Source: Stylophora pistillata (taxonomy: Eukaryota). Taken from it: 64,000 bases of DNA. The DNA lies in NCBI RefSeq assembly GCF_002571385.2, contig NW_019217784.1, positions 791,218-855,217 on the forward strand, in the 5' to 3' direction. The notes beneath the pieces are model-generated. The model was not told where the DNA came from, searched no databases, and saw nothing but the letters and a program-made list of their open reading frames with translations. Both the position numbers and the translations under genes were made by a program. How positions within the stretch are numbered: the first letter of the stretch is position 1; every line of letters starts with the position of its first letter. Positions 8,531 to 63,457 of this stretch are shown piece by piece.

Positions 8531-9652
8531 ATGACAGTTAATTCAACTCATCCTACACAAAGCCCGACGGAGAGAAATGTGCGCTTGGGTTTTTTCATCG
8601 CCACGTTTGTTATTGGACTTGTTGGAAACCTTCTGGTAATCGTTATCATAACCAAGCGAGCCAAGAAAACTGTCAACGATTTTTTCATTATGAATTTAGC
8701 CGTGTCCGACCTTATGCTTATCTTCTTTCTACCGCTGCACATCTACGGCATGTTTGACACTATTCGTGTCACAGCATTTTTCTGTCATTTCATTCGCCCT
8801 CTCATGACAGCATCGTTCTTCGTCAGTGTCTACACCCTCACCTCAATGGCCATTCATCGGTGTCACGTGATCTTGCATCCTTTCAAACAGGAAATGCGTC
8901 ACAAGTCCGCTGTTTTATGGATAATAGCACTGTGGATTATGTCATTTGCAAATGTTCTTCCATTGATGATTGTCACCACACCAGACCCACCATTCGAATG
9001 TCTTGAAAACTGGCCGAGTTTGAATCACAGGCGGGCATATACAGCTGCTCTCTTTGTACTTCAGTACATCCTTCCACTGGTTATCATCGCAATAGCATAT
9101 ATCAGAATAGGTTTGGATCTTAACCGCTCGTGTTCTCGTAGTTTCAGAACTGCCAGGGCTTCCAAAAGCCTGAAGAACCAGGCAAGACGGCGAGAAAACT
9201 TTAAAGTAACTAAAACTCTGGCGATAATCGTCATGATATTTGCAGTGTGTATGCTACCCAGTCAGGTGGGTTGGATGTTGTTGGATTTTGGTGACACAAA
9301 ACAAAAAGCGATCGCCATTAAGGTGATTTTTAAATTTTCACTTGTTCTCACTGTGTTTCACAGTTGCCTGAATCCTCTTGTTTATGGAAGCATCACTAAA
9401 CAGTTTCGCCGTGGCTACGTGAAATATCTGTCGTATTTGTGTTACTGTTGTAGAAGTTCCATCTTGAGAGAAATCAAGATATTGCGCATTTCAGAAAGCT
9501 CATCCCAAAAAGGCCCTGACGACTTTAAACGTGCGCACAATGGACTTCTAGGAAATGCCGGACTCGAAGCAATATGTTCTCCAAAATCGAAACAAATTAG
9601 AGATGAATTATCTTCAAGCTATGAGACATTTGATGTTGTGACCGTACTTTAG
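8531..9652 (+). CDS. Single-exon rhodopsin-like (class A) GPCR, neuropeptide-receptor-like, 373 aa
   Basis: Seven hydrophobic segments. Motifs: TM1 GN (GLVGNLLV), TM2 NLAVSD, TM3 HRC at the DRY position, TM5 YILP, TM6 CMLP, TM7 NPLVY. ECL2 CLENW; Cys-rich tail CYCC. Confidence 0.93.
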   Translation: MTVNSTHPTQSPTERNVRLGFFIATFVIGLVGNLLVIVIITKRAKKTVNDFFIMNLAVSDLMLIFFLPLHIYGMFDTIRVTAFFCHFIRPLMTASFFVSVYTLTSMAIHRCHVILHPFKQEMRHKSAVLWIIALWIMSFANVLPLMIVTTPDPPFECLENWPSLNHRRAYTAALFVLQYILPLVIIAIAYIRIGLDLNRSCSRSFRTARASKSLKNQARRRENFKVTKTLAIIVMIFAVCMLPSQVGWMLLDFGDTKQKAIAIKVIFKFSLVLTVFHSCLNPLVYGSITKQFRRGYVKYLSYLCYCCRSSILREIKILRISESSSQKGPDDFKRAHNGLLGNAGLEAICSPKSKQIRDELSSSYETFDVVTVL

Positions 9653-10406
9653 AAAGAACTTGATGAATGTCGCATTGTAACATTTAGAGATAAATTAAAT
9701 TACCTGCGGTATGTTCTGAGATTTGAATAGTAATGACGCAAACTATAAATCCTTAAGTTTGTTGTAAAACTGGACGAAATTTTTCATCTGTACATTACAT
9801 ACTTTAAAGTACAAGAATACATGTGCTCATATACCTAGTATTTGGTTGGCGGACGTTTTATTCAAGACAGATTTTCTGTTCCCTAAGTTTTCCGTGTCCT
9901 CTAACAAGTTCAAGGAGGTGCCGGTCAGTAGGACCACTGAATGATCAACATCTTGAAACAAGTGCTGCATGAGCGAAAATTTTTTTTTTGTCTTATCCCG
10001 AGCATGAGACAACGGATAATTTTTTCTTTGTCCGTTCGCGACAAGAATAAAAACAAAATCTTTACCGAGCTCAAAATTTACTATCTTTCTTTAACAAACA
10101 TGTACTGTGTTATATGGCTGAAACAGATACAACTATATCAATCATAGGTTTCCTCAGCACACTTTTTTTTAACACAATTCACCACACAACTATTTACTAA
10201 CATAATTATTGGAAATCCCCGACAAAGAGACATCTGTATTAGCATAAAGTACTTTCTTCCTATTGATCTATTTTGGGCGTGGCCTCTCAACACAGAGGTC
10301 TGAAATCTAAGGAAGATTCGTGTACAAGAATGTGGTCGATCACAAATGAGTACTGTTCATTCTATTCATGGCTGAATTACGTTCAATCATAAAATACGCC
10401 AAGGTT

Positions 10407-13400
10407 TTAAATATACATTTGTTGTACTACGAGACCTGGCAAGTCCACTGTAACTCTTCCTTTCAAGCGATTCATTTCTTGATTAGTCCTGTGGATATCC
10501 TGCTCTGACGCCGCAAAACGAATTTGAATTTCACGAGCCTTTTTTAAGTTTTGTAATGCTTCTTCAGTTGAATCAAGGGCTCCAAGAGCACATCCCAATC
10601 CATAATAAGCTCTAGCAGTGTCCACATGATTGTCACCTAAATAAACAAAACATAATCAGAGTTAAGAAAACAAAAACAAAAGTAATTTGTTGGCCAATCT
10701 CTAGCTGACGATGTAAGTAGTTTTTACCAGAGTTTTAAAACGGATCGTAGTCATTAGAAGAAATGTGAGTTTATTGCCTGGCACGTTGCTTTGAGTTTGA
10801 GCCTTGACAAGGTCAGTGAAATAGTTTCAGAAGAGAATGATCTAATTCTTGCAACAACCAACAGACATTTACTACTACTGACTCTATAACAATCTATAAC
10901 TGTGGACAGGCACAACTTTTAGGCACATTTTTGAGGTGAGTAACTTGAACCTTCTCCGCTGTCTTTTCATATTTGCGCTAGTTACCTTTAATACTCACTC
11001 AGTATAAGAATTGCAAATATCTGCTGCAGAACTTTTTACAAAGCATATTTCTCACACCCTGTCGTTAGGAAGGGTGTGTAAAAACTACTTTGAGAGTATT
11101 TACCTAGAAGATATTTCCTCATTTCAAGGGACTCTCTCTTGCACGCTACAGCACGCTTAAGATCACCAAGACTCTGATGAGCATCACCAAGGTAATGTAA
11201 TAAGGAGGCTGTAAAGGGGTGTTGCCCCAGTAGCTCTCTATATCTGACCAAACAGATGTTTGTCCAGATGTTGATTGCAGCTCTTAAGTTTCCACTGACA
11301 AACATGGCCACTGCAAGAATAAAGATGAATGACAATCAGTACTCGCCAGGGTATAGAACATATGGATGCATTAGTTACCATTTGGCAAAAGCTGCATGTT
11401 AATACAAGTCAACCTCCCTTCGTAGCCACAACTTATAAGCGACCACCTGCGACCAACTCTCCTTTGTGACCATTTTTTCAAAATACCAAACGTTTCCAAG
11501 TTGAATCGCTGAAAATGGAAGCTCTCATAAGTGACCAGCTGTCATTAGTGAGCACTTTTTGAGATGCTTGTCTACAACTTTCAATTGTGTTTAACCTCTC
11601 TTTGGTGACCAATTCAACAACAATCAGCTTTATCTCTTGTGAGTGGAAACTGAAAATTGTTTCAAAAAATGTTGTTACATAGAGTAACAAACAAGCCAAG
11701 TTTGTTTCACATGAATTCCCCCAAACTCTGTATTAAATACTTTGTGAGATACAACCACCTCCCATAAGAGGCCACTTGGACATGACATTTCAGGCAATCA
11801 CTTACGGTAGGTCTGACTATTTTTCTAAATCATAATACTGTAATATAAAAGTGCAAACAGCACAGCTGTTAATTCTCAATACATACTTGCTAGATCACAA
11901 AAGCCACCAGCAAGGAGCATGCGTTCCACTTTACCAGATCCATCAGAGCGTACCCTCCTCTTCCGTATAGCAATTCCTTGTGCTATGAGTGAGATACCTT
12001 TACTTTTGTCCCCAGAAATGACAGTGCAAAGACCCAGCTTGCACTTACAGTGACCCACACATTCTGTATCAGAAATCAAAAGTTCACTTTGAAGTTCATG
12101 TGCTTGCTGGAGGCTTTCTTTTGCAGATGTGTGGAATGCATCCTTGTAGCCATAGTAACACAGCTGTTTAAATCCAATGGAAACAAGACACTCACTGTGA
12201 AGGATGTTGTCATTTAGTTTAACAGCTGCCTTTAAACACTGTGAATACACAGACATGAATTCATCTATGTTTAATACTTTTGCCAAAAAGTTGACAGCAT
12301 TGGTGGAGACAGACAGTCCATCACGCTCTAACTGATCACCACAATCTTCAACTGATGCCACAAGAGCATGAATGATGTTAGTCTTGCAGTTGTGATATTT
12401 TTCTATGGCATTTCTACAGTCTGTACCTATAAATTCTTCACTCAGATCTTGCAGAACTGCGAGATAATGCCTTGAAAACAGTTTAATTGCTGTGCTGTAT
12501 TCCCTACAGGTTTCTTCCATTGATGACCTGCAAAATGCTTGTACAAGAGGATGCAAGCTATAGTACAGTTGATTGTTCACTTCATCTAGCTGTAAGAGTG
12601 AATGTTGCTCAAGAGTGTCAAGCATATACTGGAAATCTAAAAAATCCTCAGTTGGAAACAACACATCTTTTGCTTCCTCTTTGGTAAATAATTTTGGGAA
12701 TGAAGCCAAAAAACCAAGGGCTTTCTTCATTTCAGGCTGTAGATTGTTATAAAATACTTTAAGATGGGAATTTAACACTTGAATTTTTTGGCTCTTCCCT
12801 TTAAGAAAATTGTGAGGACAGTTTTGTAACTTTCTGTGGAGATCACTTGAGTTAACTGTTTTTTTTTTCAAAAATGATGCTGTTATGTTCAGTAGCAGGG
12901 GGATACCATGGCAAGCAATGCCAAATTCCTTTGCCCTTTGATTTGAGATGTTAGGTACACAGTTCTTGAGAAAGAGCAATGAGTCCTCATTGGCTAGTGG
13001 TCTCAGGGGAAAATGTCTGGTGGCAAAAGGCCAGAGTTCTAATGTTGAGATAGGGGTCCTACTTGTGATAAGTGTGACAAGAGTTTTTGCATGGTCACCA
13101 ATATTCTTCAAAAGTTTATAAAAGTCTGACTCATCTTTAGCTTGCAAGTCTTCAGCATTATCCAGAATAAGCACTGTTGGCTTTTGCAGGGAAGTTAAAT
13201 ATCTTTTCAGCATTGAGATTGCATCTTGCTGATCAGCACGAGTACCAACTGCTTCCTCTAACAAGAGTTCAGCTGCACATGTAAGAGATGACACTGATCT
13301 CAGGCACATGTATATCACATCTTTTTTTCCTTGACTCAGTATCATGTTCCCAACAGCTTTTGCAAGGGCAGTTTTTCCAAATCCTGGAGGTGCAACAACA

Positions 13401-14940
13401 GTGACAAGACAGGTTGTATCATCCTCATCTGTGGTCAACAACCTTGTGATTTCTTCACAAATATCCATCCTTCCAACAAAATTAGGAACCTTTCTGGGAA
13501 GGCCAACAGATCTTGGTCTCCGTTCATTATCCTCACAGGGCTGTTCACCTGCAAATAAAAAAAAAAAATTGTTTGTTATAACTTCAACTAAGTAATTGCA
13601 TCATTAAGTGAATAGGTATGGGGGACAGAGAGAGATAAATTTTCTTTAAAGTTTGATTCAGGGGTGATTCTGCTGGGACAAATTACAACTTAATCATTCT
13701 TGGGGTGAGGAAGGTTAAGAGAATAAGCCCCTTCCCCTTGAGAATCTCCAGATTAAGAAGGGAAATCTACTCCCCATGGAATGTTTGATTAATTGTGACA
13801 CATAAAAATGCCACTTGGTCAAACCACATCACTTTTATCAGTTACAACTGGTAACAAATACAGTCATCAACACCTGCACCAACAGAACTGCATAATTTGA
13901 ACATTTCAATGAACCTGCTACACATAGCTTCCCAAGAATATTTAGCGATAACCTTCGAATATTTTATTATCAAAGGCACTTTTTTCCACTGTAAAATATT
14001 TGCAAAGTAAGTAACCAGCAATTTCTGGGCTAGATTGCCATCAAAACTGACCCTCTGAAATTTTATTTTAAGAAAATCCCCTCTACGGTGGTGGAGGGGC
14101 ATGAACATTTTCTGGAACTAGACAGTAGAGACATCAGACCTACTGAACAGTCATACATTCAGTCACACAGCTGACCACTAGCTGCTACACAGGAAGCAAA
14201 ACATGTGCAAATTTATGGTCACGAAAAGACATGGGATGTTTGGTTTGAGATGCCACCTTCCCTTAGACAGCTGTTTGTCTCCAGTGCATCATAAGGCTGG
14301 CTATCTCAATTCACATAAAGGACCATTAGAAACATTCACCAGAAATGCTTGGAAATAAAATAACTCAGTCTGTAATTACAACTTTTCATTCATGATTTAT
14401 CAGCTGGCCGAATGCCAATCTAAACAGTACGTCTACTCTACTTGTTAGACTGCACAGATATCATCGCGTAAAAGAAAGGTATGTCGAATAAGGTAATCAA
14501 ATAGTTAAAGATTACTACACTACGTGTAAATTATTTGCGATTGTCATATAAAAAATTTAACTATGAACAGAAATAAATAGATTTTCTTACCCTCTATACG
14601 CATCTTAATTGGAAAACGTACACGAATATTTTATGCTCCCGTAGAATCAACATATCTCAATACCTGACATATGGCGATGGATCTCATTGGCCAAGAAACT
14701 ACGGCCGGAGCCATGAAGAGCAGCCAAAAACGATTCAAAGGCACCAGGACCACATCGAGAAAGCACATCCAACAGGTAAAATGCCTTTCCCTCACTAGTG
14801 GTTTCAGCCAGGATCAATTCTTTACTTGCTTCGTCAAGAATTTCGTTGGTAAAAAGTACTTCTGTTATCCTCCTTGCATCAATATTCCGCGAGATATGTA
14901 GCCGAAACTTCCTTAACACTTTCCTATGTGATTCCTCCAT
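10407..14940 (-). CDS. CARD + NB-ARC/STAND ATPase + TPR protein (~791 aa); exons 14940-14664, 13548-11887, 11310-11104, 10636-10407
   Basis: Exon 1 is a caspase-2/RAIDD-like CARD (LLDVLSRCGPGAFESFLAAL). Exon 2 has LPRKVPNFVGR, Walker A APPGFGKT (13393-13370), Walker B LILDNAED, LITSR, GIPL and LHPLV. Exons 3-4 have kinesin-light-chain-type TPRs (LLGQHPFTASLLHYLG; LLGDNHVDTARAYYGLG). All introns are GT-AG and keep the frame. Confidence 0.9.
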
Positions 14941-15046
14941 GTTCTACCTCAACAAAACAAGTTAATGTTGGGGAGAGCAAACGTTTTCAAACGGTTTATA
15001 AGACGACCTCTCAGCTCGTGATTTCACAAAAGAGTTACTTCAAGCT

Positions 15047-15213
15047 TTCTCGGAAATTCCGGAAATGATAGTAAAGCGTTTGCGTAGTGAGGCCACCGGA
15101 AACTGTATCCACCAAAAACAATGTTAATCGTTGATGGGAAAGTCCCACCTGTGAAACTTTTCACCATAATATAAGAATCATTTCAAAACAAGCATTTCCC
15201 TGGGAAAGTTTCC
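15047..15213 (-). promoter_or_regulatory. Cluster of NF-kB and STAT(GAS)/ETS-like sites upstream of the CARD-STAND-TPR gene
   Basis: GGGAAAGTCCC at 15136-15146 (canonical GGGACTTTCC on the - strand), GGGAAAGTTTCC at 15202-15213, CGGAAATTCC at 15051-15060, GAS TTCTCGGAA at 15047-15055 and TTCCGGAAA at 15057-15065. All lie within 107-273 bp of the ATG. Confidence 0.65.
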
Positions 15214-15273
15214 TCGATATGTTTACAGAGCTGTGTAATTTATATTGTAACTTCCTTTTCGGAGTGTTAACTA

Positions 15274-15680
15274 GACAAGACAAGACAATACAAGACAGGA
15301 CAAGATTTATTTGAACTGTAAAATTACCTTAGTTACAAATTAAACGAGAAATAAATTAAAAATACATGCAGTTGCTGGTCACCCAAAATAACTAAATAGC
15401 TAAACTAGTTGGGTGACCACCATATATTAATTGAAAATAAATATAAAGTCAGAAAAGAGGCATTTTCACCATTTAACATTTTAAATTCTTATTAAGGAAA
15501 TAGATTACAGAACAAATAATTCTTAAACACGTATACAATAAAAAAAGTAAATGAAATATATAACTAAATAACAGAAACACCAAAACATAACAGTTAGTAA
15601 TAAAACTTAAGACAAATTAATGAAATGCATAGATAATTCTCTTTTGAATGAATAGCGCGTTAGAATCTTCCTTTAGAGTG
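15274..15680 (-). mobile_element. LINE (L2/CR1-type) 3' end fragment
   Basis: (CTTGT)n-like simple-repeat tail preceded by AATAAA on the - strand, and a 3' stem-loop GGTCACCCAA...TTGGGTGACC. The boundary at 15680 is approximate. Confidence 0.5.
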
Positions 15681-35417: not shown

Positions 35418-36506
35418 TCAGGGTGTTACTTTTCTCAGTTGATCTTGTAATTTAGATAGAGTTTCTTGCCAGCTTTCTGGTGTAGAGCCCTTTTGGCCCT
35501 GTGTGACAACAGTTTTTGATCCGAGGTAAGTCGAAAACGCCGACGACTCCAGTGAGGTTGCAGCACACCCAGGAATAGCGTTTGTTGCCAATTTTGATAC
35601 GCAAGAGAGAAGCTTCGGTGAGGTATGGAAAAGAAGCGAGTGGGGTGGCGAGGTGGCAGGATATTCTCGACTTCCAACCAAACTCAGAGAAGGGTACGAC
35701 CAGACGGATAATGGACTGTACAGGTAAGGGGACTCGTAAGAACCCATGATGCTGTCAATGGCGAAGCTTTTCTTGGTAGGACGAATGTAGGTCAGATTCG
35801 GGTATCCGCGACAGTCGTCAGCGCGAAAAGGAAAGAAAGATGAGGATGCTGAGAGAGGACTCAGCCCCCGGAAATACGCCGAGGGACAGGAGCTGCTTCC
35901 ATATTTTAGGGGATTACTTCTCCTCACCCGCCGTCTGGCTCTTCTACGCCTGAAATCACCATTGGCGAAGTCTTCAACGTTGGCCGGATGAATAGCCCAA
36001 TAGTTTCCTTTGCCGTTCTCACTGCGACCTGCTTTGATAAAACACTCGTTTAGCGACAAGTTGTGCCTAATACTATTTCTCCAACTCTTGTCCTTATTTC
36101 GGTAATACAGAAAGTTATCTGAAATGTACTGGTAGATATCTCCCAGTATCATCTTTTTGTTAGGGCAGCTTAGTATCGCCATCGCTATCAGCGCAATGTA
36201 AGAATGAGTTGGCTTCACGTCTGGATCGTTGCAATCAGTTTTATGACTACCATCTTCTTCGGGCGACTGGCTTTGGTCCATCTTTGCTGGGTCGCCATCA
36301 CAGTCTAGCCCGTTCACTCTATAGTTTTGCTCATATTCTTCAGAGCCCTGTGCTCCGTGATCGCTCTCTGAAATAACAAGTTCACTCTCTGCGTGTTCAA
36401 TTTCTTGGTTTTCGGGCAGTAATGCCATTTTACTGTGGCCCTCTGCAGTCGAAAGTTCTGCAAAGTTTGTAAGGTCAACCACTCGATCACTTAAAAATTC
36501 GCTCAT
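35418..36506 (-). CDS. foxQ2: Forkhead transcription factor, FoxQ2 class, single exon, 362 aa
   Basis: Forkhead domain KPTHSYIALIAMAIL...WRNSIRHNLSLNECFIKAGRSENGKGNYWAIHPANVEDFANGDFRRRRARRRVRR carries the FoxQ2 signature. An EH1-like FAIDSIM lies at 35765-35745. Confidence 0.92.
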   Translation of the reverse strand: MSEFLSDRVVDLTNFAELSTAEGHSKMALLPENQEIEHAESELVISESDHGAQGSEEYEQNYRVNGLDCDGDPAKMDQSQSPEEDGSHKTDCNDPDVKPTHSYIALIAMAILSCPNKKMILGDIYQYISDNFLYYRNKDKSWRNSIRHNLSLNECFIKAGRSENGKGNYWAIHPANVEDFANGDFRRRRARRRVRRSNPLKYGSSSCPSAYFRGLSPLSASSSFFPFRADDCRGYPNLTYIRPTKKSFAIDSIMGSYESPYLYSPLSVWSYPSLSLVGSREYPATSPPHSLLFHTSPKLLSCVSKLATNAIPGCAATSLESSAFSTYLGSKTVVTQGQKGSTPESWQETLSKLQDQLRKVTP

Positions 36507-59128: not shown

Positions 59129-62100
59129 ATGGTCGTTTGTTTTCTACAACAACGTGTGTTAAGCAATCAGCAAATTTACGGTACGTGCCGGTTTACTTGC
59201 CGTCAACTCTGTGCTGTAGCCGCAAAAACAGAACGTCAAGAGACTCGTCAGACTGGAGTTCCATTGATAATTCCGAAACATGTGATCGCCAAAGCTTTTA
59301 TCGTTCATCCTTCAACAACAAGTGTGTTTGACGCCAGCTCAAAATATCAATGGCTTACTAAGACCAAGTTATTCGAGGGATTACCCGCTCCTTTTTCAAA
59401 CGTAGACAATTTCGTGGATGATAAAGAATATGTGCATCTAAGAGAAAATTTCAAGGAGTCCATTCTACATAACCATGCTTTCCGCAGAGAAGGAATAAGC
59501 GCGAACCACAGGTTCAGACGTAGAGGAGAGGAAATGACTATGGGGTTTTTGCAAGATTTGCTGAGGTTTGGATGGTCGTTGTCTGATCGACATCGTCATT
59601 TGGATGATTGTTTTCTTGATTTGAAGCCCAGGATGAGGATCCACTGGGTCAGACATCATAACTTTTACCAGTTGGACCAAGAGCCGGCATTTGTTATTCG
59701 AACAAAGCAACCCACCCATCTTTTAGAAACAGGTAAGTGAGACAACTTTTCTTTCTGATTGGAACCCAGACAGAAAAAATCAACTAAATTGCTGTAGCTC
59801 TGAGAGGAATTGTCTTAGTACACTTTATTCCGGCCACTTAATATGTGTCTTTAAATAGCTGCTCCCACAAGGTATCCGGTCGTTTCACCAACGAGTTGTT
59901 TCACCAACGTCTCGTTCGCCAACGTGTTAGGTTGATTCGCCAACGTCCTATGTCGATTCGTCAACGTCCTACTGGTCAATTCGCCAACGTCTAAATAAAA
60001 GTTTGCCTTCACTTGTGTTCTCTTGCAATGTTGTGTTATGTGGCATTTTATAAAGGTGAGACTTTTCTTCTTTGAATGGATAACAGTCAACAATCCTTAT
60101 TGAAATATACTATTAAAAACATGTTTTCTAGTTTTTGCAGAAGCGCCTATTATGGCACTCCTTGCTTCTTTTAATTGAGTGCGAAGTGAAAACTGTCATA
60201 GATTTAAAACGAGTTCTGTTAACTGGCGGCATTCTAATGGAAGGTGCGACTTATGTTGCTTATTGTTTTCTGTTTCACATTTCATAACGACTTAGTGCTT
60301 CATTGAAGAGATGCTTTTGGACTATATTGTAATAAAATATCTGGTTTTTTGTACTTGTAAATATTTGATACTATATATTGTAATAAAATTGCTGTTGTTA
60401 TTTAGTTGACGTTCCATTTTATTTATTACTCGATTATAAGGCTGGAAAAGTTGAATATACAATGTTAATCGACATCGTAATACATTAATGAATTGGTGCG
60501 GTAGTTGCAACAACTGTCAAAATGTGCAAATTGATCGGAAGTCAGTCAAGCGAAACTGGCAGTGACTCAAGGATCAGGATTGCATTCTAAACATCTATAA
60601 GCAACTTTTTTTTTCGTTATTCTTGGATGTCTGACATTGGCAAATTGACCAGTAGGACATTGGGAAATCGACATAGGACGTTGGTGAATCAACCTAACAC
60701 ATCGGCGAACGAAACGTCGGCTAAACGACTGCAATTCTCCCACAGTCCTGAAGTCGCTAAATTAAATAGTGGCTCCTGCAGTTCAGTGGTGCAAAATTCT
60801 GTGGTCGGCTTGAACAGTTGCGTGGCATATGCTCTAAAAGAGTCATTCATTTTTGAATGGGAAGAGGGTATCTGATTCTTTTGCCCCACTATCGAGTTTG
60901 CCCCTTTGAGTTTTTTCCCTACCGTAGACCATGTTTGCCCCTACCATGTCTAAATTACTGTAGTTTCTGTCTAAAATTATGAACAAGTTACAACCAAAAC
61001 AAGTTTCAAATTTAATTGGGCAACAGCCATTTTGAAAGTTTATATGTGCGTGGGAGCTGGGGCGACCAGAAACAAGAAATACCAGAAACAACTATGCTAG
61101 CAGTAATGTTTCAAAATTGTTGGACTGTGGTCAAACAGTGAAATACAAAGAACTTTTGTTGGTCGTGACCTTTACAGTGGCTCCTAAAGGAGCTGTTTTT
61201 ATATTTAACTGAGCCTAAAGGCTACATGGTTGTTCAATGATCAGGTTGTTAGCTATCTTGCGGTCAGTAGAGTACGTTGCAGGCTTGCAGAAACTGCTTT
61301 GCCATATGATCACCACTCTTGTACTGATCCCACAGGCTAAAGATATTTGCTTGCAGCTGCCGTTACATTTGTTATTCGAGTCTACACAGTTTATGCTCCA
61401 AAACTAGTTGTTTTTGGTAACCCCAGATCCCACGCAGAGTATTTAGTTGATTCTGCCAACCCAGTTCCCAAGCAGATTCCACACAATTGCCGAAATTTAA
61501 AATAGTCATGGCTGACTTGACATTTGGCACATTCTGCTAGTGCCTTGGATCTTGAATGATTTTTGTCACAAATCAACTCATCTGAACATTACACAATCTA
61601 GGGGCAAACTTGACGTGGTGGGGTCAAACTTGAAAAGTGTGGGGGCAAACATGGTATAAGGTAGGGGCCAACTTGAAAGGGTGAGCTTGATAGGGGGCGA
61701 ATGCAGTGCAATTCTATGTATGCCCCGTTCTTTAGTGTGGCTAAACAGTGTACACAAACACACATACCTTATATATATAATATAAATATATAATCTTTGT
61801 TCTTAGATCGAATCGAATGTGTGACTTTGGGAGCACAGGAGCAACAATTTGTTAACGTTCAAAGTGGCTGCATGTATTCTGAAGTTGCTCCAAATATTTG
61901 ATAAATAATAATTGTCTGTTCCACTCTGGAAAAAAGGGAGCATTCCTTAGCAATCAAATACAAGTACCAAAGAAATATATTCTGTTGTTTGACACTGACA
62001 CTTCAACTGCTTAGTATGTCAGGACAGTGTAACTGTTAGGGTGAAACACCAGAAGACTTGAAAAATTGTTATTTTGTTAATGCTACAAAATAAGCCTTTG

Positions 62101-63457
62101 TTCAAACAGCAATAAACAGGTTGTCTGTTGCTCAAGTGGGATTTGATTTTTTTTTTAATTGTTATGCAGTGAACATAAGATATTAATTAAGTGCTTTGAT
62201 GTGACATGTATCTCAAATAGCACCACACAGTGTTAACACTTGGCTCTTGTGATATAAAAATACTTTGTATACAATTTTATTTTAATTTACTTTTGATGGC
62301 CCAGCTATTCATTTTTATTCAGTTGTGGAGCCGTTGTGTAGTGCATTCTCTTGTTATTTCACACTGTTTCCTATTGTAACACTTCTTAATGGAAACCATG
62401 ATGTCAGGTAACTTAAGTCTGTCCATGGCCTTCTGAAAGTGGAAATCTTTCCCTTGATGTTTTCTGCCTAATGGTAGGTGGAGTACCCCATAGGTGAAGG
62501 AAAGCACTGACATCAAGCCCGTGATGCCTTGTGGCCATACTTGCAACAGGAAAGGCACAGACAGATGACTTTTCTGATGCATCTGTAATTCCCAAACTTT
62601 CCCTTTTTTGGATAATAAAATAGTTTGGAAAGGGTTGGTTTGCAGAGTGTAGGTTTACCCTGTACCAAGGTATACACCATTAAGAGAGTAATCCAACCTT
62701 GCTTGTTATTGAGTTTACAATATTGGAGGCAGCAGTTCACCAGTGATAAGCCAAACTCACTATGTGTAGGGATTATGAGGTCTTATTTGATAGTTATCAC
62801 CCACATCAAGCTGTGGAAATGTGATTTCCAGTATCCTTGGCATGGAGTTTCATATTACTGAAAGTATATTTACAATCTTCCAAAGTTGATGTTACTCATT
62901 TTTTGTCTTATTTACATATAGATATTGAAAAAACATCCTTGGAAACAATACCCGGTCCGTTTGATAACTACAGCATCAATGTCTTCCGCCATCCCATCTT
63001 ACATCTACAGAACAACCCAGGCTTTCAGAATAGTGCACTTTACAAATACCCCTACAATCATACAATGTTTTTGACAAACATAAACAAACTGACATTTGAG
63101 CAGCAGCAAGCTTATGGAATCATGAGCATGTTTGGTTCTCTGGTTGCCTTGGCAATGGATGATGGTGTTCAGATGGGTCAACACTTGCAGAAGCCACTTG
63201 TTACTAAGTGTGTAATCACAGATGGAATCCAGTTTACTTTGATGTGTTATCAACTCAACACACTCTCATTTCAGGAAGACTTTGGAATCAAGAATTGTGC
63301 CTGGGTTTCACACAGCATGAATCTTTTTAAGGTGACAACTGCTAAACGCAAACCACTTTTATTTGAGACTTTGGATATGGACAACGAAGTTCCTGGTTTT
63401 AATGATGAGTGTTTCAAAACTGTTTTAGCTTTCCTTTGCCAAGAGACAGAGTCATGA
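59129..63457 (+). CDS. Mitochondrial large-subunit ribosomal protein of the mL37/mL65 (MRPL37/MRPS30) family, ~379 aa; exons 59129-59732, 62922-63457
   Basis: Arg-rich transit-like N-terminus, QWLTKTKLFEGLP, VITDGIQFTLMCYQLNTL, GIKNCAWV, GFNDECFKTVLAFL. A phase-1 intron joins the two ORFs. Confidence 0.85.
59870..60736. mobile_element. Non-autonomous DNA transposon with long subterminal TCGCCAACG arrays
   Basis: Inverted arms of about 120 bp (59873-59995 / 60620-60730); 8-bp TSD CTCCCACA at 59862-59869 and 60737-60744. Confidence 0.8.
60866..61713. mobile_element. Second non-autonomous DNA transposon with TTTGCCCC subterminal repeats
   Basis: Left TTTGCCCC repeats (CCATGTTTGCCCCT) mirror right GGGGCAAAC repeats (GGGGCAAACATGG). 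TSD not resolved and ends approximate. Confidence 0.65.
62398..62580 (+). ncRNA. Candidate structured intronic RNA with box C/D-like termini
   Basis: ATGATGT at 62398, CTGA at 62433 and 62507, GTGATGC at 62521, CTGA at 62574. Stems CTTGATGT/ACATCAAG, GCCTAATGG/CCATAGGT, TCTGTC/GACAGA. Confidence 0.25.

What the first reader, a model, noticed from the sequence alone, without database searches (positions are those of the whole stretch)
10407..14940. CARD–NB-ARC/STAND–TPR gene: Apaf-1/NLR-like receptor with a TPR sensor instead of WD40 or LRR
Seen: four ORF fragments splice into one intact ~791-aa protein with a caspase-2/RAIDD-like CARD, a complete AP-ATPase-type STAND module (FVGR, Walker A, Walker B DNAED, sensor LITSR, GxP, LHPLV at the MHD position) and C-terminal TPRs. 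Established: Apaf-1/CED-4 are CARD-NB-ARC(-WD40) and vertebrate NLRs are NACHT-LRR. NB-ARC-TPR receptors are typical of fungal and bacterial immunity, and cnidarians have expanded STAND repertoires. Inference: this is a ligand-sensing apoptosome/inflammasome-like platform that recruits a CARD caspase or adaptor, and it is functionally uncharacterised.
Basis: partly seen in the sequence, partly recalled or inferred. Interest (0 to 1): 0.85.

Follow-up and report, generated by a model that had tools for sequence, protein, structure and literature searches.

The report
Coral CARD–NB-ARC–TPR switch gene
This is a real, expressed four-exon coral (Stylophora pistillata) gene for an Apaf-1-like cell-death or immunity switch protein with a CARD, an NB-ARC ATPase and a short TPR arm, but this design was already catalogued in cnidarians, so it is an untested member of a known kind.

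Summary
Four minus-strand exons (14940-14664, 13548-11887, 11310-11104, 10636-10407) have GT..AG introns, all in phase 1. They encode 791 aa, identical to the public Stylophora pistillata model LOC111319657. Transcript contigs from three studies and raw stranded reads confirm all three junctions.

Pfam finds CARD, NB-ARC and TPR_12 above their cut-offs. PDB profile and fold searches find Apaf-1, CED-4, plant CNLs, AfsR and the archaeal STAND-TPR protein PH0952, and no NACHT NLR.

- Apaf-1 homologues with CARD, DED or Death heads and TPR tails were described in Nematostella and amphioxus in 2007 and in corals in 2013 and 2023. The architecture is not new.
- The gene is not the coral Apaf-1. A canonical candidate lies on another contig.
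- Oligomerisation and caspase recruitment remain inference. A CARD-CARD complex prediction gave no verdict.

New here:
- The gene is a solitary, ancient orthogroup with a collinear Nematostella orthologue (38% identity, reciprocal best hit).
- Its sister clade carries DED.
- The TPR end is the best-conserved part, which argues for a conserved ligand rather than an arms-race receptor.

Interest is moderate to low.

The parts
9800..15229 (-). Approximate extent of the mRNA (about 3.09 kb spliced). The 3' end lies near 9800-9850 and the 5' end between 15051 and 15229.
   Evidence: table 8: contigs X2 record 6 (3094 nt) and X6 record 9 (3089 nt) run 176-200 nt beyond window position 10000 and reach 15051/15070. 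X1 record 2 reaches 15229.
14664..14940 (-). Coding part of exon 1: residues 1-92 plus the first base of codon 93. It holds the CARD (Pfam match residues 6-88, about 14677-14925).
   Evidence: PF00619, 2e-9, 37.7 bits; RAIDD 3crd 8.5e-5; helices spanning residues 3-91 at high pLDDT.
13549..14663 (-). Intron 1, 1115 nt, GT..AG, phase 1.
   Evidence: (joint 13546->14662, 'cut +2').
11887..13548 (-). Exon 2: residues 93-647 (part). It holds the linker, the NB-ARC NOD (P-loop domain, helical ARC1, winged helix) and the first half of the helical arm.
   Evidence: (PF00931, 30.4 bits, covering 6-247 of 248 profile positions).
13469..13480 (-). FVGR motif (residues 116-119). R119 is nearly invariant in the family alignment.
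13370..13393 (-). Walker A / P-loop, APPGFGKT (residues 145-152; K151 at 13375-13373).
   Evidence: G148, G150 and K151 are nearly invariant in A2.
13148..13171 (-). Walker B, LILDNAED (residues 219-226; D222 N223).
   Evidence: D222 and N223 nearly invariant.
13058..13072 (-). Sensor-1 stretch, LITSR (residues 252-256; R256).
   Evidence: R256 invariant among the 8 proteins of A1.
12899..12907 (-). GxP motif of the ARC1 helical domain, GIP (residues 307-309).
   Evidence: P309 nearly invariant.
12548..12556 (-). LHP (residues 424-426) at the MHD/LHD position, at the end of the winged-helix beta hairpin.
   Evidence: Y422-L427 invariant in A1; strands 411-416 and 419-424, then helix 426-437.
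11311..11886 (-). Intron 2, 576 nt, GT..AG, phase 1.
   Evidence: (joint 11310->11887).
11104..11310 (-). Exon 3: residues 647 (part) to 716 (part). It is a TPR cassette, symmetric in phase 1-1.
   Evidence: (TPR_12, 7e-8, 33 bits).
10637..11103 (-). Intron 3, 467 nt, GT..AG, phase 1.
   Evidence: (joint 10634->11102, 'cut +2').
10407..10636 (-). Coding part of exon 4: residues 716 (part) to 791. It holds the last TPR, a long cap helix and the TAA stop at 10409-10407.
   Evidence: (TPR_12 over residues 680-753 of the whole protein, 65.1 bits).

Best explanation
The locus is the expressed Stylophora pistillata gene LOC111319657. It encodes a 791-aa signal-transduction ATPase of the NB-ARC (AP-ATPase) branch of STAND proteins. 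The protein has an N-terminal CARD and a short C-terminal helical/TPR arm (about four clear TPR hairpins and a cap helix). It is a solitary orthogroup conserved across hexacorals (stony corals and the sea anemone Nematostella). It is sister to DED-headed relatives and separate from the canonical coral Apaf-1. The most likely mechanism follows Apaf-1, plant NLRs, MalT and AfsR. In the resting state the nucleotide-bound NOD is held closed by the winged helix (His425) and the TPR arm. Binding of a ligand to the TPR arm releases the lock. That ligand is probably conserved, so endogenous or widely shared. Nucleotide exchange then allows NOD-NOD oligomerisation. The clustered CARDs recruit a CARD partner, most plausibly one of the coral CARD-caspases or a RAIDD-like adaptor, which is activated by proximity. 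Shown here: gene structure, expression, domain identity, fold class, orthology and the conservation pattern. Inferred: autoinhibition, ligand, oligomerisation, partner and outcome.
For: The gene model is exact and transcribed. CARD, NB-ARC and TPR_12 score above the Pfam cut-offs. The P-loop K151, Walker B D222, sensor-1 R256, GxP and His425 are all conserved across orthologues. The AF2 model is confident (pLDDT 86.3, pTM 0.73) and has the CARD / alpha-beta NBD / helical / winged-helix / helical-repeat order. Foldseek top hits are ADP-bound Apaf-1 1z6t (8.8e-14), the STAND-TPR protein PH0952 6mfv (5.7e-13, TM 0.64 by target), CED-4, NRC1/2 and MalT. Profile hits are AfsR 1.5e-24, Sr35 3.7e-17, NRC4 1.1e-16 and Apaf-1 8e-15, with no NACHT protein among the best 60. 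The Nematostella protein XP_032225984.2 is collinear over 788 residues at 38% identity and is a reciprocal best hit. The hexacoral CARD proteins form one clade on a tree of the NOD region alone (support 100/99). The TPR end is the best-conserved region: 64-66% identity against 48-50% for the P-loop domain between Stylophora and Acroporidae. The genome holds at least 50 CARD exons. The three closest to this CARD include two that lie beside caspase exons (C11, C290) and one with a Death exon about 8 kb downstream on the same strand (C124; one gene not shown).
Against: No experiment or prediction here shows oligomerisation, nucleotide binding, a ligand or a CARD partner. The CARD x caspase-CARD complex prediction gave no verdict. 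Walker B reads D-N rather than the D-D of Apaf-1, so hydrolysis may be slow or absent. The D-N form is conserved family-wide, so it is not decay. The TPR arm is short compared with paralogues that carry 9-15 TPR_12 stretches. It could therefore serve mainly as an autoinhibitory or protein-docking element rather than a ligand sensor. The high conservation of the TPR end fits a fixed protein partner as well as it fits a small ligand.
Confidence: 0.6

Rival explanations
1. It is a fast-evolving, pathogen-specific immune receptor of the plant NLR, fungal NLR or bacterial Avs type. Its TPR arm would recognise a microbial or viral molecule directly.
For: The genome holds a large family of related NOD exons: at least 73 matches, several in tandem arrays such as C123. 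Coral NB-ARC/TPR repertoires are read as innate immune receptors in the literature. Avs3 appears among the fold hits.
Against: This gene is solitary: the nearest family members on its contig are about 1.5 Mb away. It has collinear orthologues from Pocillopora to Nematostella. Its TPR end is the most conserved region, the opposite of an arms-race sensor. No PADLOC defence model matches beyond a weak generic TPR hit.
Confidence: 0.15
2. It is a non-oligomerising regulator or decoy. The CARD would sequester or tether a CARD-caspase or adaptor, with the NOD-TPR serving as a static scaffold.
For: Walker B is D-N rather than D-D. The TPR arm is short. The TPR and P-loop regions give weak sub-threshold matches to nephrocystin-3-type domains, a scaffold protein family.
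Against: All nucleotide-switch residues (P-loop Lys, Walker B Asp, sensor-1 Arg, winged-helix His) are kept over the Actiniaria-Scleractinia distance. That is hard to explain without a working switch. The NPHP3 matches are below their cut-offs (23.3 against 24.8, and 22.7 against 100).
Confidence: 0.12
3. It is the coral's functional Apaf-1 (the apoptosome core), with TPRs having replaced the WD40 propellers.
For: ADP-bound Apaf-1 is the top fold hit and a strong profile hit. The Nematostella orthologue is listed among 'putative Apaf-1 proteins'.
Against: A separate locus on contig C149 carries two CARD exons and the only APAF1_C (PF17908) matches in the genome. That fits the CARD-CARD-NB-ARC-WD40 Apaf-1 described for Nematostella. 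P0001 has no PF17908 or WD40 match. With the wider family profile, the NOD matches AfsR and plant CNLs better than Apaf-1.
Confidence: 0.03

Closest known systems
Nematostella vectensis XP_032225984.2 (LOC116608999 isoform X1; 'Nematostella_vectensis3' in the Apaf-1 set of PMC11251625)
   Same: It has the same order of CARD, STAND NOD, helical arm and two TPR_12 units. It is collinear over 788 residues at 38% identity and is a reciprocal best hit. It falls in the same clade on the NOD-only tree.
   Different: It is 825 aa with a longer tail. Its P-loop reads PPFNGKS instead of PPGFGKT, and its Walker B is IFDNTEE. It is likewise uncharacterised.
Cnidarian DED-NB-ARC-TPR proteins (Nematostella A7SNU5 / XP_001626708, Actinia tenebrosa LOC116308654, Stylophora contig C71)
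   Same: They share the same NOD and short TPR tail, at 30-36% identity. They form the sister clade, with moderate support (86/97). The exon design matches, with the death-fold head on its own exon.
   Different: The head is a death effector domain instead of a CARD. The expected partner class is therefore DED proteins (caspase-8 or FADD-like) rather than CARD proteins.
Apaf-1 (human/mouse; PDB 1z6t, 3sfz, 5juy)
   Same: CARD followed by an NB-ARC NOD with P-loop, sensor-1, GxP and a winged-helix His. It is the top fold hit in its closed ADP-bound form.
   Different: This protein has no APAF1_C helical domain match and no WD40 propellers, and so no evident cytochrome c sensor. It carries a TPR arm instead. 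Walker B is D-N. A separate canonical Apaf-1 candidate exists on C149.
AfsR of Streptomyces (SARP-NOD-TPR; PDB 8k60, 8jke), with the archaeal PH0952 (6mfv) and MalT (8bob)
   Same: AfsR is the best NOD profile match (1.5e-24 over profile positions 11-350). PH0952 gives the best global superposition (TM 0.64 by target). All have the NOD-plus-TPR/SUPR arm architecture.
   Different: These are prokaryotic transcription regulators with DNA-binding heads. None has a death-fold domain.
Plant CC-NLRs (Sr35, ZAR1, NRC2/4)
   Same: They share the NB-ARC NOD, with profile E-values of 1e-16 to 1e-17 and the same oligomerising-switch logic.
   Different: They have LRR sensors and coiled-coil pore-forming heads.
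Vertebrate CARD NLRs (NOD1, NOD2, NLRC4)
   Same: They share the general plan of CARD head, STAND NOD and repeat sensor.
   Different: Their NOD is a NACHT domain and their sensor is LRR. Here NACHT matches only the P-loop core at the threshold (27.0 against 26.7 bits), and no NACHT structure is among the hits listed.

Membership tests
NB-ARC / AP-ATPase branch of STAND NTPases (Pfam PF00931) | The profile match spans the P-loop domain, ARC1 and the start of the winged helix, and scores above the curated cut-off. | tested here: met
   PF00931 scores 30.3-30.4 bits against a cut-off of 23.5 and covers 6-247 of 248 profile positions.
NB-ARC / AP-ATPase branch of STAND NTPases (Pfam PF00931) | Walker A GK[ST], Walker B hhhhD, sensor-1 Arg, GxP in ARC1 and a conserved His in the winged helix (MHD/LHD position). 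| tested here: met
   GFGKT 148-152, LILD 219-222, TSR 254-256, GIP 307-309 and LHP 424-426 are present. All are invariant among the eight proteins of A1. The second Walker B acid is Asn.
NB-ARC / AP-ATPase branch of STAND NTPases (Pfam PF00931) | Solved relatives by sequence profile and by fold are NB-ARC proteins rather than NACHT or other AAA+ proteins. | tested here: met
   Hits are AfsR, Sr35, NRC4, Apaf-1, PH0952, Roq1, CED-4 and MalT. No NACHT NLR is listed.
NB-ARC / AP-ATPase branch of STAND NTPases (Pfam PF00931) | Nucleotide binding or hydrolysis and nucleotide-dependent oligomerisation. | not testable with these tools
   This needs purified protein.
Apaf-1 orthologues (apoptosome core) | APAF1_C helical domain (PF17908) and C-terminal WD40 propellers. 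| tested here: not met
   P0001 has no PF17908 or WD40 match. The only PF17908 matches in the genome are on C149, next to two CARD exons.
Apaf-1 orthologues (apoptosome core) | N-terminal CARD joined to the NOD. | tested here: met
   CARD at residues 6-88, with the junction to the NOD exon seen in RNA.
Animal NLRs (NACHT-LRR) | NACHT NOD and LRR sensor. | tested here: not met
   NACHT scores 27.0 bits against a cut-off of 26.7 and covers only profile positions 7-131 of 167, the P-loop core. There is no LRR match and no NACHT structure among the fold or profile hits listed.
Cnidarian death-fold / NB-ARC / TPR proteins (Zmasek 2007; Hamada 2013; Noel 2023) | A death-fold head (CARD, DED or Death), an NB-ARC NOD and C-terminal TPRs in a cnidarian genome. 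| tested here: met
   Domains. Organism. Descriptions of the class. Relatives with DED, Death and CARD heads.
CARD (death-fold) domain, PF00619 | A helical-bundle death fold with a profile match above cut-off. | tested here: met
   PF00619 scores 37.7 bits (cut-off 23.9) and PF16739 scores 36.4 (28.2). The model has helices spanning residues 3-91 at high pLDDT. RAIDD, Apaf-1, BCL10, CED-3 and caspase-9 CARDs appear in the PDB searches.
CARD (death-fold) domain, PF00619 | Homotypic binding to another CARD. | tested here: inconclusive
   The complex prediction with the CARD of the C290 caspase gave 'no answer'. This counts neither for nor against binding.
Bacterial Avs / anti-phage STAND systems | A match to curated defence-system models. 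| tested here: not met
   PADLOC gives only weak generic hits: TPR 3.8e-4 and mad8 5.3e-4. Avs3 is a low-ranking fold hit.

The most novel reading that the evidence does not exclude
Hexacorals keep a second, TPR-gated 'apoptosome' in parallel with canonical Apaf-1. This would be a single-copy CARD-NB-ARC-TPR switch, conserved since the anemone-coral split, whose unusually conserved TPR arm reads one fixed endogenous or symbiosis- or stress-related signal. It would then activate a CARD-caspase directly or through a RAIDD-like adaptor. A sister DED-headed switch would feed the caspase-8 arm.
Probability: 0.25. Interest if true: 0.65.

Novelty: new member of a known kind. Interest (0 to 1): 0.35.

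Why it matters
Corals die by caspase-dependent cell death during bleaching and disease, but the upstream switches are poorly known. This gene is a cleanly defined, expressed candidate for such a switch. It is conserved from Nematostella to reef corals, so it can be studied genetically in Nematostella. Its conserved TPR arm suggests one fixed trigger that could be found by affinity purification. As a catalogue item it adds nothing to what coral NLR surveys already list. Its value lies in being a tractable, single-copy representative of the death-fold / NB-ARC / TPR class, no member of which had a reported function in the papers read here.

Tried and rejected
1. CARD-CARD complex prediction (this CARD against the CARD of the C290 CARD-caspase) gave no verdict, with a score of 0.00 in both runs. 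It is not evidence either way.
2. The DNA of the Pocillopora orthologue, needed for dN/dS, was not on record. Selection was therefore judged only from per-domain protein identity.
3. PADLOC defence models gave nothing meaningful.
4. A paper search for the locus name gave nothing. No paper uses the strings CARD-, DED- or DEATH-NB-ARC-TPR; 'NB-ARC-TPR' appears mostly in brown-alga and fungal papers.
5. Earlier scan notes near the locus: none.
6. NACHT membership was rejected. The hit is P-loop-only at threshold, and no NACHT structures were hit.
7. Apaf-1 orthology was rejected, because a canonical candidate lies on C149.
8. A nephrocystin-3 relationship was rejected, because the matches are below cut-off.
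9. The second-nearest paralogue (C71b) showed no death-fold exon within the 10 kb fetched, so its head is unknown.
10. I could not tell from the text held whether the dsRNA-induced Nematostella gene NVE2160 is this gene's orthologue.
Whole-protein steps used the public protein P0001, which matches the four exon translations exactly.


Full report
OBSERVATION. The window is from Stylophora pistillata, at G000:C1:791218-855217 in a genome of 398 Mb. Reading 10300-15100 on the minus strand gives a four-exon gene:
- Exon 1 CDS, 14940-14664.
- Exon 2, 13548-11887.
- Exon 3, 11310-11104.
- Exon 4 CDS, 10636-10407.

All three introns (1115, 576 and 467 nt) are GT..AG and phase 1. The ATG at 14940 follows an in-frame TAG, and the stop is TAA. 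The in-frame translation of each exon is an exact substring of the public 791-aa protein P0001, 'uncharacterized protein LOC111319657 [Stylophora pistillata]', which UniRef names 'CARD domain-containing protein'. The exons cover residues 1-92, 94-646, 648-715 and 717-791, and the three split codons supply G93, M647 and G716. Whole-protein analyses used P0001 by its id.

EXPRESSION. Twenty public runs from ten studies hold the stretch. The RNA runs hold about half of its sampled words, as expected for a spliced message. Four runs were laid on 10000-15400:
- Single transcript contigs of 3094 and 3089 nt (X2, X6) carry all three junctions. Two contigs of X1 carry them as well.
- The raw stranded reads of X24 give 10, 5 and 4 junction-spanning reads. 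The 4 reads on the CARD-exon junction begin at one place, so they could be copies of one molecule.
- Nearly all first mates lie on the plus strand, the usual sign of a minus-strand RNA.
- The junctions fall exactly at 10636/11104, 11310/11887 and 13548/14664.
- The message runs from about 9800-9850 to 15051-15229.

DOMAINS AND FOLD. Exon by exon, Pfam gives CARD (37.7 bits, cut-off 23.9), NB-ARC (30.4, cut-off 23.5, covering 6-247 of 248 profile positions) and TPR_12 (33.0, cut-off 30.1). On P0001, TPR_12 reaches 65.1 bits over residues 680-753. NACHT touches its cut-off (27.0 against 26.7) but covers only the P-loop core.

All are invariant in the eight-protein alignment A1 (seven coral orthologues plus the DED-headed Actinia protein).

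An AlphaFold2 model built on a 30-sequence alignment is confident (pLDDT 86.3, pTM 0.73). It shows:
- a helical CARD (residues 3-91);
- a five-stranded alpha/beta P-loop domain;
- a helical ARC1;
- a winged helix whose hairpin ends at LHP;
- an all-helical arm from 441 to 790, with about four clear TPR hairpins (588-755) and a long cap helix.

Foldseek against the PDB puts ADP-bound Apaf-1 first (1z6t, 8.8e-14). Next comes the archaeal STAND-TPR protein PH0952 (6mfv, 5.7e-13, TM 0.64 by target), followed by CED-4, NRC1/2, MalT, ZAR1, Sr35 and, lower down, Avs3.

Sequence profiles agree. With A1 the hits are Apaf-1 9.7e-12, RAIDD CARD 2.6e-11, Sr35 5.4e-11 and AfsR 5e-9. With a wider 30-member family profile they are AfsR 1.5e-24, Sr35 3.7e-17, NRC4 1.1e-16, Apaf-1 8e-15 and PH0952 1.8e-14. 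No NACHT NLR appears among the hits listed. The ATPase therefore belongs to the NB-ARC/AP-ATPase branch. Within that branch it looks at least as close to the TPR-linked prokaryotic type as to Apaf-1.

PLACE IN THE GENOME AND IN EVOLUTION. The NOD exon has at least 73 matches in the genome, several in tandem arrays such as contig C123. The nearest paralogue is only 34% identical, and the gene itself is solitary: the next matches on its contig are about 1.5 Mb away.

Full-length collinear orthologues exist in:
- Pocillopora verrucosa (87% identity, 789 aa);
- Montipora (about 50-55%);
- Acropora millepora (48-50%).

Many exon-2-only gene calls from other coral assemblies also match.

Nematostella XP_032225984.2 (825 aa) has CARD plus two TPR_12 units. 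It aligns end to end at 38% identity, and its best match in the Stylophora genome is this gene.

The nearest Stylophora paralogue (C71) has a DED on a separate upstream exon (PF01335, 4.9e-21). The related Actinia and Nematostella proteins are DED-NOD-TPR.

I built a maximum-likelihood tree of the NOD/helical region only, with the heads removed (36 rows, 530 columns). It gives:
- one clade for all hexacoral CARD-headed proteins (support 100/99);
- a scleractinian subclade (100/100);
- a DED-bearing sister group, with moderate support (86/97).

CARD-STAND-TPR proteins also exist in the brachiopod Lingula. The uniform phase-1 introns around the head exon and the TPR exon fit head swapping by exon shuffling. 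Hamada et al. proposed this for corals.

By region, the TPR end is the most conserved part between Stylophora and Acroporidae: 64-66% identity, against 48-50% for the P-loop domain and 37-43% for the CARD.

NOT THE CORAL APAF-1. The only APAF1_C (PF17908) matches in the genome lie on contig C149, next to two CARD exons. That fits the two-CARD Apaf-1 described for Nematostella. P0001 has neither APAF1_C nor WD40.

POSSIBLE PARTNERS. The genome has at least 50 CARD exons. The three closest to this CARD in the genome search (33-35% identity) are:
- the CARD exon on C11, which lies upstream of caspase exons on the same strand;
- the CARD exon on C290, which lies 1.5 kb upstream of a caspase ORF with a QACRG site;
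- a CARD exon on C124, with a Death exon about 8 kb downstream on the same strand. This would be RAIDD-like if the two belong to one gene, which I did not show.

A plain BLASTP puts an uncharacterised CARD exon on C83 just ahead of C124. RAIDD is also the best single-sequence PDB hit. The one complex prediction allowed, this CARD with the C290 caspase CARD, returned no verdict. The partner remains open.

MECHANISM. By homology with Apaf-1, plant NLRs, MalT and AfsR, the protein most likely works as follows:
- It rests as a closed monomer, locked by nucleotide and winged-helix His.
- Something bound by the TPR arm opens it.
- It then oligomerises through the NOD and presents clustered CARDs to a CARD-caspase or adaptor.

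The conserved switch residues support a working switch. The solitary, old, TPR-conserved pattern argues for one fixed ligand or partner rather than a diversifying pathogen sensor. All steps beyond domain identity are inference. Walker B is D-N rather than D-D. This form is conserved across the family, so hydrolysis may be slow.

WHAT IS KNOWN. Zmasek et al. 2007 described CED-4/Apaf-1 homologues of Nematostella, amphioxus and sea urchin with CARD-pair, DED, Death or TIR heads, in which WD40 is sometimes replaced by TPR. Hamada et al. 2013, as summarised in PMC4083563, counted about 500 NACHT/NB-ARC loci in Acropora with CARD, DED or Death heads and TPR, LRR, WD40 or Ank tails. Noel et al. 2023 noted that coral NB-ARC proteins mostly carry TPRs. 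The Nematostella orthologue is in the 'putative Apaf-1' set of PMC11251625. Two other notes of this scan report HEPN-headed NB-ARC-TPR genes in the same genome. The architecture is therefore known, and this particular gene is annotated but unstudied.

VERDICT. The gene is a new member of a known kind. Interest is moderate to low (0.35). What raises it slightly is the finding that this is a deep, single-copy hexacoral orthogroup with a conserved TPR end and a DED-headed sister. That makes it a tractable entry point into the function of this class.

Noticed in passing
window 8531-9652 (+): An intronless 373-aa rhodopsin-family GPCR ORF (7tm_1, 6e-46). It is convergent with the CARD-NB-ARC-TPR gene, and its stop lies only about 150-200 nt from the 3' end of that gene's mRNA.
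   Followed up: partly
window 35421-36506 (-): A 362-aa ORF with a Forkhead domain (2.1e-33), a fox-family transcription factor gene.
   Followed up: no
window 59129-59737 and 62837-63454 (+): Two exons matching mitochondrial ribosomal protein S30 / PDCD9 (PF07147; 5.6e-13 and 4.8e-20).
   Followed up: no
window 13558-14233: Low-depth RNA contigs (depth 2-4 against 30-60 on the exons) lie inside intron 1 in two polyA runs. They are probably unspliced precursor or rare intron retention.
   Followed up: no
window 15290-15400: A separately transcribed piece upstream of the gene's 5' end. It has loose ends that continue elsewhere, so it is probably an exon of a neighbouring gene (tables 2, 7, 8).
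   Followed up: no
window 12921: All four runs laid read G where the assembly has C on the plus strand. On the coding strand this turns codon 302 from Gly to Ala, and Ala is the residue in the Pocillopora orthologue. The reference may carry a rare allele or an error.
   Followed up: partly
G000:C149:77184-84024: A candidate canonical Apaf-1 locus: two CARD exons (77184-77429 and 80600-80839) followed by the only APAF1_C matches in the genome (83443-84024).
   Followed up: partly
G000:C124:552759-560724 (-): Two CARD exons (560473-560706 and 559102-269) and a Death-domain exon (552759-552956) lie on one strand. This may be a RAIDD/CRADD-like adaptor gene, but I did not show that they belong to one gene. 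The first CARD exon is among the closest in the genome to the CARD studied here.
   Followed up: partly
G000:C123 (about 2000-158000): A tandem array of at least ten related NOD exons, some with internal stops. This is the expanded, turnover-prone part of the family, in contrast to the solitary gene in the window.
   Followed up: no
L057:577-1530 (-) = G000:C71:30576-31529: A 317-aa ORF with a YVDD motif, which looks like a reverse-transcriptase fragment of a retroelement. It lies just downstream of the DED-NB-ARC-TPR paralogue. It was not tested against Pfam.
   Followed up: no
Montipora capricornis orthologue (P0234-P0237): RefSeq lists two isoforms of 800 and 712 aa, a difference of 88 residues. 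That is about the size of one phase-1 cassette such as the CARD exon. No alternative junction was seen for the Stylophora gene.
   Followed up: no
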